Virus record (IMG/VR): IMGVR_UViG_3300032116_000001
Coordinates: 1 to 64,000 of that record
Direction: 5' to 3' (one strand)
DNA length: 64,000 nt
Below the pieces are notes generated by a model, which ran no database searches, was not told the origin of the DNA, and was given only the letters and a program-made list of their open reading frames with translations. The translations under genes and the position numbers were made by a program. Position 1 is the stretch's first letter, and every line of letters begins with the position of its first letter. Shown here piece after piece: positions 20,376-44,199 of the stretch.

Positions 20376-20397
20376 AATTGAAAAATGAGAATCTAAT

Positions 20398-20698
20398 CGG
20401 GGCGTGGCGAAATGGCAGACGCAGGGGACTTATAAAATGAGCACTTGTTTGTGAAAGCTGCAAGTGAATGCAATCAAATTCGGTGAAACCTTAACAGTTA
20501 GGCTGATGGCAATACCGAGCCAAGCTAACTCAAAACAGAGTTAGAAGGTGTAGAGACTAGATGGTTGCTGCCTAAGTCGAAAGATATGGCAAAGGTATAG
20601 TCCAGACCACAAAATCCTTTGGGATCGTAGTGAAAGCTATAGTGGTATGAAAATCCCTTAGTAGCAATACTGTGTGGGTTCGAGTCCCACCGCCCCGA
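20398..20698 (+). tRNA. tRNA-Leu (TAA) interrupted by a group I intron
   Basis: Exons 20398-20431 and 20650-20698; joining them restores GGGGA-CTT^AAAA-TCCCT. Confidence 0.92.
20432..20649 (+). mobile_element. group I intron (tRNA-Leu UAA type, IC3-like), 218 nt, no ORF
   Basis: Inserted after the U of the anticodon, ends in G; P AAATTCGGTGAAA, Q AATACCGAGC, R GTAGAGACTAGATGG, S AAGGTATAGTCC. Confidence 0.9.
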
Positions 20699-20748
20699 TT
20701 AGGTTATATATTGATTACTAATGCGCTTTGTGTGCTTTTAGTATAAGA

Positions 20749-23505: not shown

Positions 23506-23628
23506 ATGAATCATCTCTTATCGACGACAATATGTGGAACAACAGGAACCTCAACAAGAGGAATCCTTTCCCTTGGCGTTATCGGCAAGGATAGTGATTC
23601 TGATTCAGGAGAACCCATCGAATCGTAG
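23506..23628 (+). CDS. Gly/Ser/Thr-rich leader peptide (40 aa)
   Basis: MNHLLSTTICGTTGTSTRGILSLGVIGKDSDSDSGEPIES; run of GGA/ACA/TCA codons; upstream of a terminator and tRNA-Gly/Ser/Thr. Confidence 0.8.
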   Translation: MNHLLSTTICGTTGTSTRGILSLGVIGKDSDSDSGEPIES

Positions 23629-23689
23629 CTTTACTGTGATTACAGAACAAAGAGGCTCGATTCGATAAGATCGAGCCTCTTTTCTTTTT
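23617..23689 (+). promoter_or_regulatory. transcription attenuator (antiterminator overlapping the leader stop, plus terminator)
   Basis: 2:3 ATCGAATCG(T)AGCTTT/GAGGCTCGATTCGAT; 3:4 AAAGAGGCTCGAT/ATCGAGCCTCTTT followed by TCTTTTT. Confidence 0.8.
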
Positions 23690-23818
23690 AGATATGATGT
23701 CTGGGAAGAGAAAGATCGAATATTGAAAATTTCATACAGGTATAGATATAAAAGTGTTAGGGGGTGTTGGATCGATCTTTGATCGCAGGCCTCACCCCCT
23801 TGATCGAGACACATTTTC

Positions 23819-23892
23819 GCGAGATTGGTATATGGGTTGTGCCCTAGCCTTCCAAGCTAGAGAAAAGGGTTCGAATCCCTTATCTCGCTCCA
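23819..23892 (+). tRNA. tRNA-Gly (TCC)
   Basis: GCGAGAT/ATCTCGC-TCCA; CTAGC-CTTCCAA-GCTAG. Confidence 0.95.
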
Positions 23893-23943
23893 ATTTAAGA
23901 CACATTTCTTTGTGCTGCCAATGGGCAGCTTTCAAAAGAAAAC

Positions 23944-24030
23944 GGATGGGTGACAGAGCGATCTATTGTAGCGGTCTTGAAAACCGCCGTGCCAAAAGCA
24001 CCGTGGGTTTGAATCCCACCCCATCCTCCA
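23944..24030 (+). tRNA. tRNA-Ser (TGA)
   Basis: GGATGGG/CCCATCC-TCCA; long variable arm. Confidence 0.92.
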
Positions 24031-24128
24031 TTTTGTAACAAAATCATAAAATTCAAAGCAGGTGTAGCTCAGTGGTAGAGCGCCCGCCGCGAAGGTTGAT
24101 GGTTGCAATATCGATAAATAGATTATGT

Positions 24129-24545
24129 ATGGCAATAACAAAATACAAAGGAGCCGTCGGGCTAACTAATGTAATGGCCTGTCTTGTCAATCAAAAAGCA
24201 AAAATCTTTGTTCCAATAGACGAAGACTGTCAATATGACCTGGTGGTAGATTATCAAAATTATCTTTACAGAGTGCAAGTTAAATATGCTGAGGCAAAAA
24301 ATGGCAAGATCGTTGTAAAGACGCGCTCAACGAATAACTATTGTGAAATTCGTTATACTAAAGATCATTTTGACGTGATTGCTGTTTGGGACAATGTTGG
24401 CAAAAAAGCATATTTTATTTCATCGAATTTAATCACAGAAGGAATGACGGAAATGACCTTGAGATTAGATGCACCAAAAAACAATCAAACTAAAAACATA
24501 AGATTGGCTCGTAATTATGAGCAATTTAATGCTGCGGTCGCATAG
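24129..24545 (+). CDS. PD-(D/E)XK homing endonuclease (I-Ssp6803I/PDDEXK_5-like)
   Basis: YDLVVD...RVQVK...YTKDHFD...LRLDAPKNNQ. Confidence 0.85.
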   Translation: MAITKYKGAVGLTNVMACLVNQKAKIFVPIDEDCQYDLVVDYQNYLYRVQVKYAEAKNGKIVVKTRSTNNYCEIRYTKDHFDVIAVWDNVGKKAYFISSNLITEGMTEMTLRLDAPKNNQTKNIRLARNYEQFNAAVA

Positions 24546-24613
24546 TGGTCGATTGCACCTCTCTTGTAAAGAGGAACTCCACACCGTGGGTTCGAATCCC
24601 ACCCGTAGCTCCA
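24531..24613 (+). tRNA. tRNA-Thr (TGT)
   Basis: GCTGCGG/CCGTAGC-TCCA; CCTCT-CTTGTAA-AGAGG; overlaps the endonuclease stop. Confidence 0.9.
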
Positions 24614-24725
24614 TTTTTCGCACATATGTGTCAGGGGTTCGAATCCCCTCTCCTGCTTTGAGTTGAGTGATGATATCCGATCATAAAAAATCCCCCTTTT
24701 TCTCAATAGTGATCGGATATATAAA

Positions 24726-25325
24726 GTATTGCTGTGAGCTAAATCAATTGACACAGCATGATGAAACCAAAATCATCTAAAAACAATAAGGTGCTCCATA
24801 TACGTCTGGGAAAGATAAATTAGACGTGGACACACTGTGATGTGGACTAATCACAGCGCACTGGGGCATGTGTGCAAGCCCGAAAAGCCTATCTTTACTG
24901 ATATAGTTAAAGAGAAAGAGCAGAGAGTTAAGGCTTAAAATAAACTCCATGCGTTCGTAAGGATGAACTCAAAGACGAGTTCAGTTATGACTAGGATACG
25001 AGAGGAGGGAGGCAATGAGTTTCTCTCCTCTCCCCGACAAAGCGATTTCCGACTGCTCATCGGAGAAGTGATCTAGTAAAACACTCAGAAAAACACTAGC
25101 GTAGGAAATGCGTTAATCCCTGATTTTTTATCGGTTTTTAGAGACAAAAAACTGTTCGTATAGGGCTTGCGGTAAGCCTCTTGTTTTAGCTAGGTGATCC
25201 TGTATGTAAAAACCAAGCGGATGGAACAAATCAATTTGTTTTCGCGAGCAAATGATCCATTGACTTTGGGGAACAGCGTAAGAACGTTTCGCCATGAGGC
25301 TTTGAGCAAAGTCTCGTTCCCCAAA
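24726..25325 (+). ncRNA. large structured ncRNA (~600 nt), ROOL/GOLLD-like
   Basis: No + strand ORF of 60 aa or more, own promoter, many helices, located between tRNAs. Confidence 0.65.
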
Positions 25326-25339
25326 AATAAAAAGATTCT

Positions 25340-25416
25340 GGGTATGTAGTTCAGTTGGTTAGAGCACCTGCCTGTCACGCAGGAAGTCGCGAGTTCAAGT
25401 CTCGTCATATCCGCCA
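25340..25416 (+). tRNA. tRNA-Asp (GTC)
   Basis: Canonical cloverleaf, CCA. Confidence 0.97.
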
Positions 25417-25436
25417 AAATTTCCAAAGGAGACAAA

Positions 25437-25652
25437 ATGAATAGACAAATAGAAAGCCTCGATCATCTGGTGTCTCTTGGGCTACTGACATCATATGAGT
25501 TTGTAAACGTGTCAGCCAATAACATTGAGGGCGAGATTTCAGAACATCATAATTCTGATCGATTGAAACTCATATTCCCGAATGGGTTGGAAGTGAAGAT
25601 CACTGCGATCACAACAGGCATGGAAGAAGATGCTCTTTTGAGATTGGAATAA
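25437..25652 (+). CDS. hypothetical protein
   Basis: AAGGAG SD. Confidence 0.65.
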   Translation: MNRQIESLDHLVSLGLLTSYEFVNVSANNIEGEISEHHNSDRLKLIFPNGLEVKITAITTGMEEDALLRLE

Positions 25653-27178: not shown

Positions 27179-27379
27179 ATGAAAGATTTTGAAGACGTGG
27201 TTTTTGGAAGTTCCGATGAATGGAATGGGGCAGCTGGTATTGTGCCTGAGGACAAGTTTTACGTTTCTTATCCCGATTGTTCCATTCAGATTTGCGACAC
27301 CGAAGGAGAGTGTGCGGCAATTCAAAGAGAATTCCGTGTTATGCACCGCCGAAACCCGATCACTGGCGAAGCAACTTAA
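27179..27379 (+). CDS. hypothetical protein
   Basis: Promoter motif upstream. Confidence 0.7.
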   Translation: MKDFEDVVFGSSDEWNGAAGIVPEDKFYVSYPDCSIQICDTEGECAAIQREFRVMHRRNPITGEAT

Positions 27380-27419
27380 AAATCCCCTTTCTTTCGTGGC
27401 CTAATCGGATATATAAGAT

Positions 27420-27602
27420 ATGGAACGAGACTACCAAGTTGATATTAGTGCCACGGCTGTGGTGCGAACCTGTGTTGAAGTTCGGGCTTCCAGCCCCGAA
27501 GAGGCCGTAGGCTTGGCCATCGAAGTTGCTGAAAGCGGCAACGTGATCTGGAAGTATGACGGCGTAAACGATGGGACTATGATCGTTTTTAACGTGGAAT
27601 AA
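27420..27602 (+). CDS. small hypothetical protein (VxAxSxEEA motif)
   Basis: Promoter motif; VEVRASSPEEAV. Confidence 0.7.
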   Translation: MERDYQVDISATAVVRTCVEVRASSPEEAVGLAIEVAESGNVIWKYDGVNDGTMIVFNVE

Positions 27603-44113: not shown

Positions 44114-44199
44114 TGGGTCTTAGGCGAATTGGTAGAGCCGCCTGTCTTTGGAACAGGACTCCTGAAAAGGTGGAGGTTCGAATCCTCCCGACCCAGCCA
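44114..44199 (+). tRNA. tRNA-Gln (TTG) with enlarged variable arm
   Basis: CCTGT-CTTTGGA-ACAGG; GCCA end. Confidence 0.88.

What the first reader, a model, noticed from the sequence alone, without database searches (positions are those of the whole stretch)
24058..24657. Russian-doll locus: a tRNA split by an insert carrying a PD-(D/E)XK endonuclease and an intact tRNA-Thr
Seen: a canonical tRNA 5' half (acceptor + D arm) at 24058 and a canonical 3' half (T arm + acceptor) ending at 24657 pair with each other. The ~520-nt insert is bracketed by a possible helix GCGAAGG/TTTTCGC. It contains an I-Ssp6803I-family endonuclease whose stop lies inside tRNA-Thr(TGT). Established: this family usually sits in group I introns of tRNA genes, but no group I core is visible here. 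Inference: either an intron-less homing element that destroyed one tRNA (its ends look Thr-like) while supplying a cleavage-resistant replacement, or a tRNA-like scaffold processed to release the nested tRNA.
Basis: partly seen in the sequence, partly recalled or inferred. Interest (0 to 1): 0.75.

Follow-up and report, generated by a model that had tools for sequence, protein, structure and literature searches.

The report
Homing-nuclease-plus-tRNA cassette inside a dead tRNA
In a 379-kb freshwater phage, a 0.5-kb selfish cassette (a homing endonuclease gene fused to its own odd tRNA-Thr) sits inside a former ordinary tRNA gene. The ordinary gene is now a dead relic and not a new kind of intron, and the same cassette moves between unrelated phages.

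Summary
At 24058-24657 two pieces of one tRNA gene flank an intact PDDEXK_5 (I-Ssp6803I-family) endonuclease ORF (24129-24545). Its last 15 nt are the first 15 nt of a complete tRNA-Thr(UGU) (24531-24613). Rfam finds no group I core, although it detects the real tRNA-Leu intron 4 kb upstream.

The outer tRNA cannot be restored by any excision, because neither flank holds an anticodon loop. It is a pseudogene.

The decisive evidence is that an unrelated phage (L012/L013) shares only window 24121-24613 (endonuclease plus tRNA-Thr) at 96% identity. There it lies between tRNA-Leu and tRNA-Lys, with no outer halves. A homolog at 49% identity (L054) has the same ORF overlap with an atypical tRNA-Thr.

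Of 13 homolog lineages examined, 11 sit in phage tRNA arrays, and 5 overlap the downstream tRNA.

Best reading: a free-standing homing endonuclease carrying its own, probably cleavage-resistant, tRNA-Thr landed in a canonical Thr(UGU)-type tRNA gene and replaced it. This works like T4 SegB but uses a PD-(D/E)XK enzyme. That the endonuclease's target is the canonical tRNA-Thr gene is inferred and untested.

Verdict: a new variant of a known kind, of moderate interest.

The parts
24058..24088 (+). Outer (relic) tRNA, positions 1-32: acceptor 5' strand 24058-24064, D arm 24067-24081, 5' strand of the anticodon stem 24083-24087, C32 at 24088.
   Evidence: Sequence. Rfam truncated tRNA match to model positions 1-31, 21.7 bits, E 0.0047. 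The 22-nt D arm plus stem string occurs in 38 genome contigs, 31 of them tRNA-Thr(UGU).
24089..24096 (+). GCGAAGGT: probable remnant of the 3' strand of the anticodon stem plus the start of the variable loop. It directly abuts C32, so the 6-7 nt anticodon loop is missing.
   Evidence: Compared with canonical Thr(UGU), which reads CCCGCC-TTGTAA-GCGGAAGGTC in the hits. That the loop was lost by deletion is an inference.
24097..24120 (+). Left filler of unknown origin, between the relic and the shared cassette.
   Evidence: It does not align with L012/L013. No informative k-mer matches elsewhere.
24121..24613 (+). Mobile cassette: the endonuclease gene plus tRNA-Thr(UGU), shared with an unrelated phage.
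   Evidence: 493 bp at 96.8% (L012) and 95.9% (L013) identity, with sharp boundaries and unalignable flanks. L012's nine other genes have no tblastx match in the 379-kb genome.
24129..24545 (+). Free-standing PD-(D/E)XK homing endonuclease gene, 138 aa, from ATG to TAG.
   Evidence: Pfam PF11645, E 4e-23. A profile of 20 homologs matches PDB 2OST at E 4e-13. The YDLV...VQVK motif aligns with 2OST. pN/pS is 0.13 against L012. It is the only copy in the genome.
24531..24613 (+). Nested tRNA-Thr(UGU), here called Thr*: 83 nt, an 11-nt variable region, encoded CCA. Its first 15 nt are the last 5 codons (4 sense codons plus the stop) of the endonuclease ORF.
   Evidence: ARAGORN. Rfam 57.3 bits. 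The cloverleaf is kept, with 7 of 20 pairs changed on both sides across the window, L012 and L054. It is the only Thr(UGU) among the genome's 35 tRNAs.
24614..24629 (+). Right filler of unknown origin, between the cassette and the relic's 3' part.
   Evidence: It is absent from L012/L013, where tRNA-Lys follows after 4 nt.
24630..24657 (+). Outer (relic) tRNA 3' part: end of the variable loop (GTC), T arm 24633-24649, acceptor 3' strand 24650-24656, discriminator T at 24657. No CCA is encoded.
   Evidence: Sequence. It is the only orphan, perfectly paired GGTTCGAATCC-type T arm in the window. Rfam tRNA-clan T-arm match, E 0.0017.
23819..24030 (+). Context: tRNA-Gly(UCC) at 23819-23892 and tRNA-Ser(UGA) at 23944-24030, immediately upstream in the same tRNA array.
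   Evidence: ARAGORN and Rfam. A strong terminator-like hairpin at 23649-23682 precedes the array.

Best explanation
The locus is the footprint of a homing-type insertion, not a gene that gets spliced.

The cassette. A 0.5-kb selfish cassette consists of a free-standing PD-(D/E)XK (PDDEXK_5, I-Ssp6803I-like) endonuclease gene. Its 3' end is fused to, and overlaps by 15 nt, its own atypical tRNA-Thr(UGU).

Where it sits. The cassette lies inside what was a canonical, Thr(UGU)-type tRNA gene of this phage's tRNA array.
- The old gene is split at about its variable loop.
- The old gene has also lost its anticodon loop, so it is a dead relic.
- The cassette's tRNA is now the phage's only Thr(UGU) isoacceptor.

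Shown by the data:
- the anatomy of the locus;
- the absence of any intron core;
- the cassette as a discrete unit exchanged between unrelated phages;
- purifying selection on the nuclease and covariation in the nested tRNA;
- the residence of this nuclease clade in phage tRNA arrays, repeatedly overlapping the downstream tRNA.

Inferred:
- During co-infection the nuclease cuts the DNA of canonical tRNA-Thr(UGU) genes in genomes that lack it. By analogy with I-Ssp6803I the cut would be in or near the palindromic anticodon-arm region.
- Repair copies the nuclease together with its divergent tRNA, which is not cut.
- In this genome, which lacked flanking homology, repair was illegitimate. It left both ends of the old gene and two short fillers.
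- A side inference: RNase P maturation of the nested tRNA would cut the nuclease mRNA 13 nt before its stop codon. tRNA processing would then limit nuclease expression.
For: 1. No group I core at E<=10, with a positive control at 20421-20624.
2. Neither flank has an anticodon loop, and C32 abuts GCGAAGGT.
3. Only window 24121-24613 is shared with L012/L013, at 96-97% identity. There it lies between tRNA-Leu(UAA) and tRNA-Lys(UUU) with no outer halves. L012's other genes have no similarity to this genome.
4. The 49%-identical homolog P0006 (L054/L055) also ends 15 nt inside a long-variable-arm tRNA-Thr(UGU). P0007 and P0009 also adjoin tRNA-Thr(UGU).
5. Of 13 lineages, 11 are in phage tRNA arrays. 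The ORF overlaps the downstream tRNA in the window/L012, L054, L058, L059 and Synechococcus phage Sf-FR1.
6. The nuclease is intact: Pfam E 4e-23, match to 2OST at E 4e-13, pN/pS 0.13.
7. The nested tRNA is under selection: 7 of 20 pairs are compensatory.
8. The outer D arm plus stem string is Thr(UGU) in 31 of 38 genome hits and Gly in none. An intact phage Thr(UGU) has the same acceptor and D arm.
9. RNA contigs cross the right junction unspliced, and no joined form of this locus was seen.
Against: - No uninterrupted allele of the outer tRNA was found in a relative of this phage. The 'before' state is therefore reconstructed, not observed.
- The nuclease's target is untested. In free-standing homing endonucleases the cut site can lie away from the insertion site.
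- Here the break point (variable loop) and the missing anticodon loop are two separate lesions. A single clean homing event does not explain both.
- The acceptor and D arm also match phage tRNA-Gly(GCC).
- P0007 sits next to a canonical-looking Thr(UGU) that it evidently tolerates.
- All copies of the split locus are identical, so there is no evolutionary signal on whether the outer halves are neutral.
- The RNA evidence comes from low-depth assembled contigs, which can miss rare joined forms.
Confidence: 0.7

Rival explanations
1. The cassette is a mobile endonuclease-plus-tRNA unit, but the outer tRNA is not its cleavage target. It landed there by illegitimate recombination inside a tRNA array. 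The true target would lie elsewhere, for example at inter-tRNA spacers or the 5' boundary of tRNA genes. That could also explain why the ORF so often abuts or overlaps a tRNA.
For: - Homologs sit next to many isotypes (Lys, Arg, Phe, Val, Met, Thr-GGU), not only Thr(UGU).
- The break point is in the variable loop, and fillers of unknown origin flank the cassette.
- T4 SegB, the closest functional analogue, cuts in the tRNA intergenic region (PMC2988022, Table 1).
Against: - Four independent lineages adjoin Thr(UGU) specifically.
- The destroyed gene has a Thr(UGU)-type anticodon stem, and it is the loop that is missing.
- The family's type enzyme is described as specific for a tRNA anticodon region (Bonocora and Shub 2001, title in the reference list of PMC3984707).
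Confidence: 0.22
2. The outer halves are a functional split gene. The roughly 530-nt insert would be removed as a new, non-group-I intron, or the outer acceptor and T arm would act as a tRNA-like scaffold or processing handle for the nuclease mRNA and the nested tRNA.
For: - The acceptor strands pair 6 of 7 and the T arm is perfect.
- The minimum-free-energy fold of 24058-24660 pairs the first 5 nt with the last 5 nt of the acceptor strands.
- The 5' part is undecayed.
Against: - No anticodon loop exists in either flank, so no excision gives a decoding tRNA.
- There is no ribozyme core.
- The fold energy is ordinary, z -1.28.
- The outer halves are absent from all other copies and homologs of the cassette.
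- No CCA is encoded, unlike most of the tRNAs ARAGORN calls in this phage.
- There are no joined RNA contigs, and unspliced contigs cross the junction.
- RNase P and RNase Z release of the nested tRNA would break any scaffold.
Confidence: 0.03
3. The destroyed outer gene was a tRNA-Gly(GCC), or some other isotype, rather than tRNA-Thr(UGU). In that case the cassette did not replace a like-for-like tRNA.
For: - Three of the five metagenomic tRNAs with the identical acceptor pair, D arm and U73 are Gly(GCC) (also L014).
- This phage has no Gly(GCC) gene.
Against: - The retained stem strand CCCGC plus C32 and the following GCG-AAGGT match Thr(UGU): 31 of 38 genome hits are Thr and none is Gly.
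- The Gly(GCC) examples have U32 and different stems.
Confidence: 0.12
4. The pattern is a chance resemblance or an assembly chimera formed at conserved tRNA motifs.
For: tRNA D-arm and T-arm motifs are conserved, and they do cause false joins in the RNA contigs (table 5c).
Against: - Identical 4.8-6.5-kb contigs come from many independent ENA, JGI and Logan samples.
- Both pieces score as tRNA fragments.
- The acceptor strands pair 6 of 7.
Confidence: 0.01

Closest known systems
I-Ssp6803I (PDB 2OST), the PD-(D/E)XK homing endonuclease of the Synechocystis tRNA-fMet group I intron
   Same: It belongs to the same Pfam family (PF11645). The profile matches 2OST at E 4e-13 and the YDLV...VQVK active-site block aligns. 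Both are associated with a tRNA gene. [quoted passage not shown]
   Different: The type enzyme is intron-encoded, so its tRNA stays functional through splicing. Here there is no intron, the gene is free-standing, the interrupted tRNA is dead, and function is supplied by a second tRNA carried in the cassette. Direct pairwise similarity is weak (E 0.005).
T4/T6 SegB, a free-standing GIY-YIG homing endonuclease in the phage tRNA gene cluster
   Same: It is a free-standing nuclease gene lying between phage tRNA genes, and it drives preferential inheritance or amplification of neighbouring tRNA genes. Its homologs are statistically associated with tRNAs (PMC2988022; PMC13096335).
   Different: It has an unrelated fold (GIY-YIG against PD-(D/E)XK). 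SegB does not overlap a tRNA gene, is not tied to an aberrant tRNA, and is not reported to leave a split tRNA relic.
Stand-alone PDDEXK_5 genes annotated in jumbo phages (Jug phages) and in Synechococcus phage Sf-FR1
   Same: They have the same domain, are stand-alone, and occur in large phage genomes (PMC12880540; PMC12284385). The Sf-FR1 gene overlaps tRNA-Val by 21 nt.
   Different: Those reports only annotate the domain. In the passages I read they describe no tRNA overlap, no nuclease-plus-tRNA cassette and no split tRNA.
Integrase-borne elements that insert into tRNA genes and regenerate them
   Same: A mobile element sits inside a tRNA gene, and tRNA function is preserved by sequence the element brings with it.
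   Different: There is no integrase and no direct repeat of the tRNA 3' part. A whole, different tRNA is supplied instead of a regenerated end, and the element is only about 0.5 kb. This comparison rests on my own knowledge.
Archaeal split or intron-containing tRNAs (bulge-helix-bulge type)
   Same: There is a superficial likeness: 5' and 3' tRNA parts are separated by other sequence, with a short helix at the junction.
   Different: There is no bulge-helix-bulge geometry and no anticodon loop to restore. This is a bacterial-virus setting, and the junction helix is only 5 Watson-Crick plus 2 G-U pairs. This comparison rests on my own knowledge.

Membership tests
PDDEXK_5 / I-Ssp6803I-type homing endonucleases | Sequence membership: a Pfam PF11645 match above the curated cut-off. 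| tested here: met
   E 4.3e-23, 82.3 bits against a cut-off of 26.1, covering profile positions 3-136 of 138.
PDDEXK_5 / I-Ssp6803I-type homing endonucleases | A PD-(D/E)XK catalytic block alignable with the solved enzyme. | tested here: met
   YDLV...VQVK aligns with 2OST. D38, Q51 and K53 are invariant or nearly so in 20 homologs. The profile matches 2OST at E 4e-13.
PDDEXK_5 / I-Ssp6803I-type homing endonucleases | Encoded inside a self-splicing group I intron of a tRNA gene, as the type enzyme is. | tested here: not met
   There is no Intron_gpI match at E<=10 in 23600-25500, while the positive control at 20421-20624 scores 58.2 bits. Only about 40 nt and 16 nt of non-ORF, non-tRNA sequence remain in the insert.
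PDDEXK_5 / I-Ssp6803I-type homing endonucleases | Cleaves the DNA of a tRNA gene's anticodon region. | not testable with these tools
   The evidence is only circumstantial. The relic lacks exactly its anticodon loop, and four lineages adjoin Thr(UGU).
Free-standing homing endonuclease gene (Seg/Mob-like behaviour) | Its own ORF outside any intron or intein, with patchy distribution: the same gene occurs in otherwise unrelated genomes with sharp homology boundaries. | tested here: met
   A 493-bp block at 96-97% identity has unalignable flanks. There is no protein-level similarity between the two phages elsewhere.
Free-standing homing endonuclease gene (Seg/Mob-like behaviour) | Co-conversion: neighbouring DNA travels with the nuclease gene. 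| tested here: met
   tRNA-Thr* is inside the shared block, which ends exactly at its CCA. The pairing persists at 49% protein identity.
Free-standing homing endonuclease gene (Seg/Mob-like behaviour) | Cuts the allele that lacks it, while its own genome is immune. | not testable with these tools
   This needs an enzyme assay or phage crosses.
Functional tRNA (the outer gene) | A complete cloverleaf with an anticodon loop, before or after removal of an insert. | tested here: not met
   No anticodon loop exists in either flank. The full-length Rfam tRNA model gives no hit. ARAGORN on 2,565 artificial joins returns arbitrary anticodons only.
Functional tRNA (the nested tRNA-Thr*) | A covariance-model score above gathering, structure kept by compensatory changes, and Thr anticodon and acceptor features. 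| tested here: met
   Rfam scores 57.3 bits against a gathering score of 29. 7 of 20 pairs changed on both sides. The anticodon is UGU, with G1-C72, C2-G71 and an encoded CCA. Aminoacylation was not tested.
Archaeal-type split or BHB-intron tRNA | A bulge-helix-bulge at the exon-intron junctions and a restored anticodon arm after excision. | tested here: not met
   The junction helix is 5 Watson-Crick plus 2 G-U pairs with no bulges. Excision leaves CCCGCC joined to ACATATG..., which has no anticodon arm.

The most novel reading that the evidence does not exclude
This would be one instance of an undescribed class of phage selfish element: PD-(D/E)XK homing endonucleases whose ORF ends inside a structurally aberrant tRNA.

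The aberrant tRNAs seen so far are:
- a long-variable-arm Thr(UGU) in two lineages that are only 49% identical;
- an Arg(UCU)-like tRNA with almost no D arm in L058.

Under this reading:
- The element spreads by cutting canonical tRNA genes of competing phages, or of the host, and replacing them with its own nuclease-resistant version.
- The obligatory overlap makes tRNA 5' maturation by RNase P truncate the nuclease mRNA. That produces a non-stop message for tmRNA, which this phage also encodes. The result is a built-in brake on nuclease dosage.
Probability: 0.25. Interest if true: 0.7.

Novelty: new variant of a known kind. Interest (0 to 1): 0.5.

Why it matters
Phage tRNA arrays are increasingly seen as weapons against host tRNA-cleaving defences. 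GIY-YIG SegB was recently shown to mobilise and amplify phage tRNA genes (PMC13096335).

This locus shows a second, unrelated nuclease fold doing comparable work, and with tighter coupling. The nuclease and a tRNA form one overlapping cassette that moves between unrelated phages.

The split relic is a rare natural 'after' picture of such an event. It points to a concrete, testable target, a canonical tRNA-Thr(UGU) gene, for an enzyme family with only one characterised member.

It also has a practical consequence for annotation. Half-tRNAs that flank an ORF are not necessarily introns. The 157-aa ORF call that begins inside the relic is an artefact.

Tried and rejected
- **Group I, other ribozyme or any Rfam family in the insert:** nothing at E<=10.
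- **Whole-locus fold:** ordinary energy, z -1.28.
- **ARAGORN on 2,565 artificial joins of the two flanks:** 751 'tRNAs' with arbitrary anticodons. This is uninformative because the intact arms satisfy the program whatever the middle is.
- **Search for an uninterrupted allele:**
  - Both halves with a normal spacer gave no hits in IMG/VR or in genome contigs.
  - The 3' half alone gave none.
  - The left-flank junction gave none.
  - The metagenome scan found only unrelated phage arrays.
- **Diverged relatives of this phage through flanking proteins:** none.
- **Nuclease homologs by back-translated patterns:** the single protein found none, the 20-sequence alignment was too diverse, and the 4-sequence alignment gave 2 loci.
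- **Metatranscriptome contigs:** the apparent 'joints' at 24082->24585 carry 21 foreign letters (in three of the four an Asn-GTT anticodon loop). They are other organisms' tRNAs laid on conserved arms, not splicing.
- **Origin of the two fillers:** only chance 11-14-nt matches.
- **TAG recoding:** the genome has two tRNA-CUA genes, but ORF statistics give no sign of recoding, so code 11 was kept.
- **Structure prediction of the nuclease:** There is therefore no fold search.
- **Complex prediction (tetramer):** not used, because the report does not rest on oligomeric state.
- **Paper on I-Ssp6803I specificity (PMC3008403):** not held.
Full report
**Setting.** The window is the first 64 kb of a 378,848-bp virus record that CheckV rates as complete. 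The genome is 40.6% G+C. It carries 35 ARAGORN tRNA calls, a tmRNA and two tRNA-CUA genes. The locus lies in a tRNA array in this order: tRNA-Gly(UCC) 23819-23892, tRNA-Ser(UGA) 23944-24030, the finding at 24058-24657, then tRNA-Asp 25340-25416. Contigs identical over 4.8-6.5 kb occur in many independent ENA, JGI and Logan freshwater samples. The arrangement is therefore not an assembly artefact.

- Positions 24058-24088 read as tRNA positions 1-32. They comprise the acceptor strand GCAGGTG, a canonical D arm, the stem strand CCCGC and C32. Cut off at 24088, this stretch scores as a 3'-truncated tRNA (21.7 bits, E 0.0047).
- Positions 24633-24649 form a perfect T arm. The acceptor strand CTCCTGC and discriminator T follow. 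Rfam matches this T arm to the tRNA clan.
- The two acceptor strands make 6 of 7 Watson-Crick pairs.
- Intact phage-array tRNAs with exactly this acceptor pair, D arm and discriminator exist in metagenomes. The two pieces therefore come from one tRNA.
- The ORF is PF11645 PDDEXK_5 (E 4e-23). Its real start is ATG 24129. Homologs and the second phage's copy align from there, and the 157-aa gene call from GTG 24072 simply translates the relic.
- The ORF's TAG at 24543-24545 lies in the D loop of tRNA-Thr(UGU) 24531-24613, an overlap of 15 nt.
- Rfam finds no group I intron or any other family in the insert at E<=10. It does detect the genuine group I intron of tRNA-Leu(UAA) at 20421-20624 (58.2 bits).

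**The outer tRNA cannot be rescued.** C32 (24088) is followed directly by GCGAAGGT. I searched genome contigs for the retained 22-nt D-arm-plus-stem string. Of the 38 hits, 31 are tRNA-Thr(UGU) and none is Gly. Those genes read CCCGCC, then TTGTAA, then GCGGAAGGTC.

The window therefore looks like that gene with its anticodon loop removed and one G lost. It runs on to about position 46-47 of the variable loop. The right-hand piece resumes at GTC plus the T arm.

No excision of the intervening roughly 530 nt produces an anticodon arm. ARAGORN on 2,565 artificial joins returned only arbitrary anticodons. The outer gene also lacks the encoded CCA that most of this phage's called tRNAs have. It is a pseudogene.

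**The decisive comparison.** Two contigs of another phage, L012 and L013, carry the nuclease at 96-97% protein identity. Nucleotide homology to the window covers only 24121-24613. It starts 8 nt before the ATG and ends exactly at the CCA of the nested tRNA, at 96.8% and 95.9% identity.

In those contigs the block lies between tRNA-Leu(UAA) and tRNA-Lys(UUU) in a different array, with no outer halves. L012's nine other ORFs, including an SSB, have no tblastx match anywhere in this 379-kb genome. Nuclease plus tRNA-Thr is thus one unit that was exchanged recently between unrelated phages.

Both parts of the unit are under selection.
- The nuclease shows 8 synonymous against 4 non-synonymous differences, giving pN/pS 0.13.
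- The tRNA differences keep the pairing. For example, G4-U69 becomes A4-U69.

**The association is old and general.** An exhaustive HMMER search found 1,267 homologs.

- The closest, P0006 at 49% identity (L054/L055), again ends 15 nt inside a tRNA-Thr(UGU). That tRNA has the same unusual D loop and an even longer variable arm.
- Across the window, L012 and L054, the cloverleaf is preserved, with 7 of 20 pairs changed on both sides.
- P0007 (44% identity) lies about 70 nt downstream of a tRNA-Thr(UGU).
- P0009 ends 3 nt before a tRNA-Thr(UGU).
- P0010's ORF overlaps tRNA-Phe by 21 nt.
- In IMG/VR locus L058 the ORF overlaps, by 10 nt, a tRNA that ARAGORN missed. It is an Arg(UCU)-like tRNA with almost no D arm and a 20-nt variable insertion (Rfam 39.2 bits).
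- In the cultured Synechococcus phage Sf-FR1 the annotated PD-(D/E)XK gene overlaps tRNA-Val by 21 nt.
- In Acinetobacter phage Herod it lies between tRNA-Arg and tRNA-Met.

In total, 11 of 13 lineages are in phage tRNA arrays and 5 overlap the downstream tRNA. Only P0008 and P0012 have no tRNA nearby. In phages, then, this clade is typically free-standing among tRNA genes. The intron-borne Synechocystis enzyme is not the typical case.

**Family assignment.** The protein matches Pfam above the cut-off. The YDLV...VQVK block aligns with PDB 2OST, the I-Ssp6803I structure. A profile of 20 homologs hits 2OST at E 4e-13. PHROGs places it in phrog_5018, of unknown function. The defining 'inside a group I intron' feature of the type enzyme was tested and is not met. 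I file it as a member of the protein family but not of the intron-encoded arrangement.

**RNA evidence.** Four freshwater metatranscriptomes hold parts of the locus.

- Low-depth contigs run colinearly with the genome across the nuclease (24328-24478), across the ORF-to-tRNA junction, and across the right junction (24498-24648 and 24543-24693).
- No contig joins the outer halves.
- The listed 'joints' at 24082->24585 carry 21 foreign letters (in three of the four an Asn-GTT anticodon loop). They are other organisms' tRNAs aligned on conserved arms.
- This is weak negative evidence only. Contigs drop rare forms, and DNA carry-over cannot be excluded.

**Mechanism, shown and inferred.**

Shown:
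- a mobile nuclease-plus-tRNA cassette;
- its position inside a dead Thr(UGU)-type tRNA gene;
- no intron;
- selection on both cassette genes.

Inferred:
- The nuclease cuts canonical tRNA-Thr(UGU) gene DNA. [quoted passage not shown] An anticodon arm is a natural palindrome for an oligomeric PD-(D/E)XK enzyme; that last point is my own knowledge.
- The nested tRNA differs from the canonical gene in the D stem, the anticodon stem, the variable region and the T stem. It is therefore a plausible resistant replacement, and it is the phage's only Thr(UGU).
- Without flanking homology, repair was illegitimate. This left both ends of the old gene plus fillers at 24097-24120 and 24614-24629, whose origin I could not trace.

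Two lesions need explaining, the missing loop and the insertion in the variable loop. One possibility is that the left filler plus GCGAAGGT is the decayed 3' part of a tRNA that preceded the nuclease in the donor, since nearly all homologs have a tRNA just upstream. I consider this unproven.

A further inference concerns expression. RNase P cleavage at 24531 would remove the last codons and the stop of the nuclease message. tRNA maturation and nuclease translation would then compete.

**Comparison with known systems.** Functionally the closest system is T4/T6 SegB. It is a free-standing GIY-YIG endonuclease in the tRNA cluster, and it promotes inheritance and amplification of phage tRNA genes (PMC2988022; PMC13096335). 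Stand-alone PDDEXK_5 genes have been counted in jumbo phages (PMC12880540) and noted in Sf-FR1 (PMC12284385). In the passages I read, neither report mentions tRNA overlap or cargo. What appears to be new is:
- the physical fusion of this nuclease fold with a tRNA;
- the aberrant structure of the tRNAs it carries;
- the preserved relic of the gene it displaced.

**Verdict.** This is a new variant of a known kind, a free-standing homing endonuclease mobilising phage tRNA genes. It is moderately interesting mainly because it yields a testable target and a recurrent, previously unremarked gene architecture.

Noticed in passing
window 24738-25217 (up to 24645-25288): This stretch has no ORF over 57 aa, yet it is the most abundant RNA of the neighbourhood in three metatranscriptomes (contig depths 53, 142 and 61). 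A promoter-like site lies at 24748-24776 and a terminator-like hairpin at 25163-25179. The fold z-score is -3.55 and there is no Rfam match. It is a candidate structured non-coding RNA between the relic and tRNA-Asp.
   Followed up: partly
window 20397-20699: tRNA-Leu(UAA) is interrupted by a genuine group I intron (Rfam Intron_gpI at 20421-20624, 58.2 bits) and has no encoded CCA. This cyanobacterial-type arrangement is carried by a phage.
   Followed up: partly
window 24684-24729; copies near 1930, 2900, 13617, 17319 and 25651: A hairpin element of about 45 nt (inverted repeat ATATCCGATCA...TGATCGGATAT) recurs at 83-89% identity at several intergenic sites of the window. One copy lies just downstream of the relic.
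   Followed up: no
window 27376-27422; copies at about 34640, 47710, 50614, 52061, 52591, 53225, 53845, 54886, 55189, 56413, 56672, 57048, 57569, 57813 and 59026: A second dispersed repeat of about 40-47 nt has at least 15 copies, mostly on the minus strand between 47 and 59 kb. It may be a regulatory or terminator element.
   Followed up: no
own genome outside the window: 294065-294858: The phage encodes a tmRNA (tag AENNFAFAA) next to two tRNAs with anticodon CUA, which are amber suppressors that ARAGORN labels 'Pyl'. ORF statistics give no sign that TAG is recoded. The nuclease ORF itself ends in TAG.
   Followed up: partly
window 44114-44199 and 24531-24613; own genome 312947-313033: Several tRNAs of isotypes that normally have short variable loops carry long variable regions: Gln(UUG) is 86 nt, Thr(UGU) 83 nt and Trp(CCA) 87 nt. 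The same trait appears in the Thr and Arg tRNAs overlapped by the nuclease in L054 and L058.
   Followed up: partly
own genome outside the window: 313247-313263, 313421-313437, 316600-316616: Three more well-paired T arms in the second tRNA array are not part of any ARAGORN call. They are either further aberrant tRNAs or further relics.
   Followed up: no
L058 1914-1993: An Arg(UCU)-like tRNA has its D arm reduced to 3 nt and carries a 20-nt variable insertion. ARAGORN missed it, but it scores 39.2 bits with Rfam. It is overlapped by a PDDEXK_5 ORF.
   Followed up: yes
window 24072-24128: Public gene calls give the nuclease 157 aa by starting at GTG 24072. The extra 19 residues are a translation of the tRNA relic and are absent from every homolog.
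   Followed up: yes
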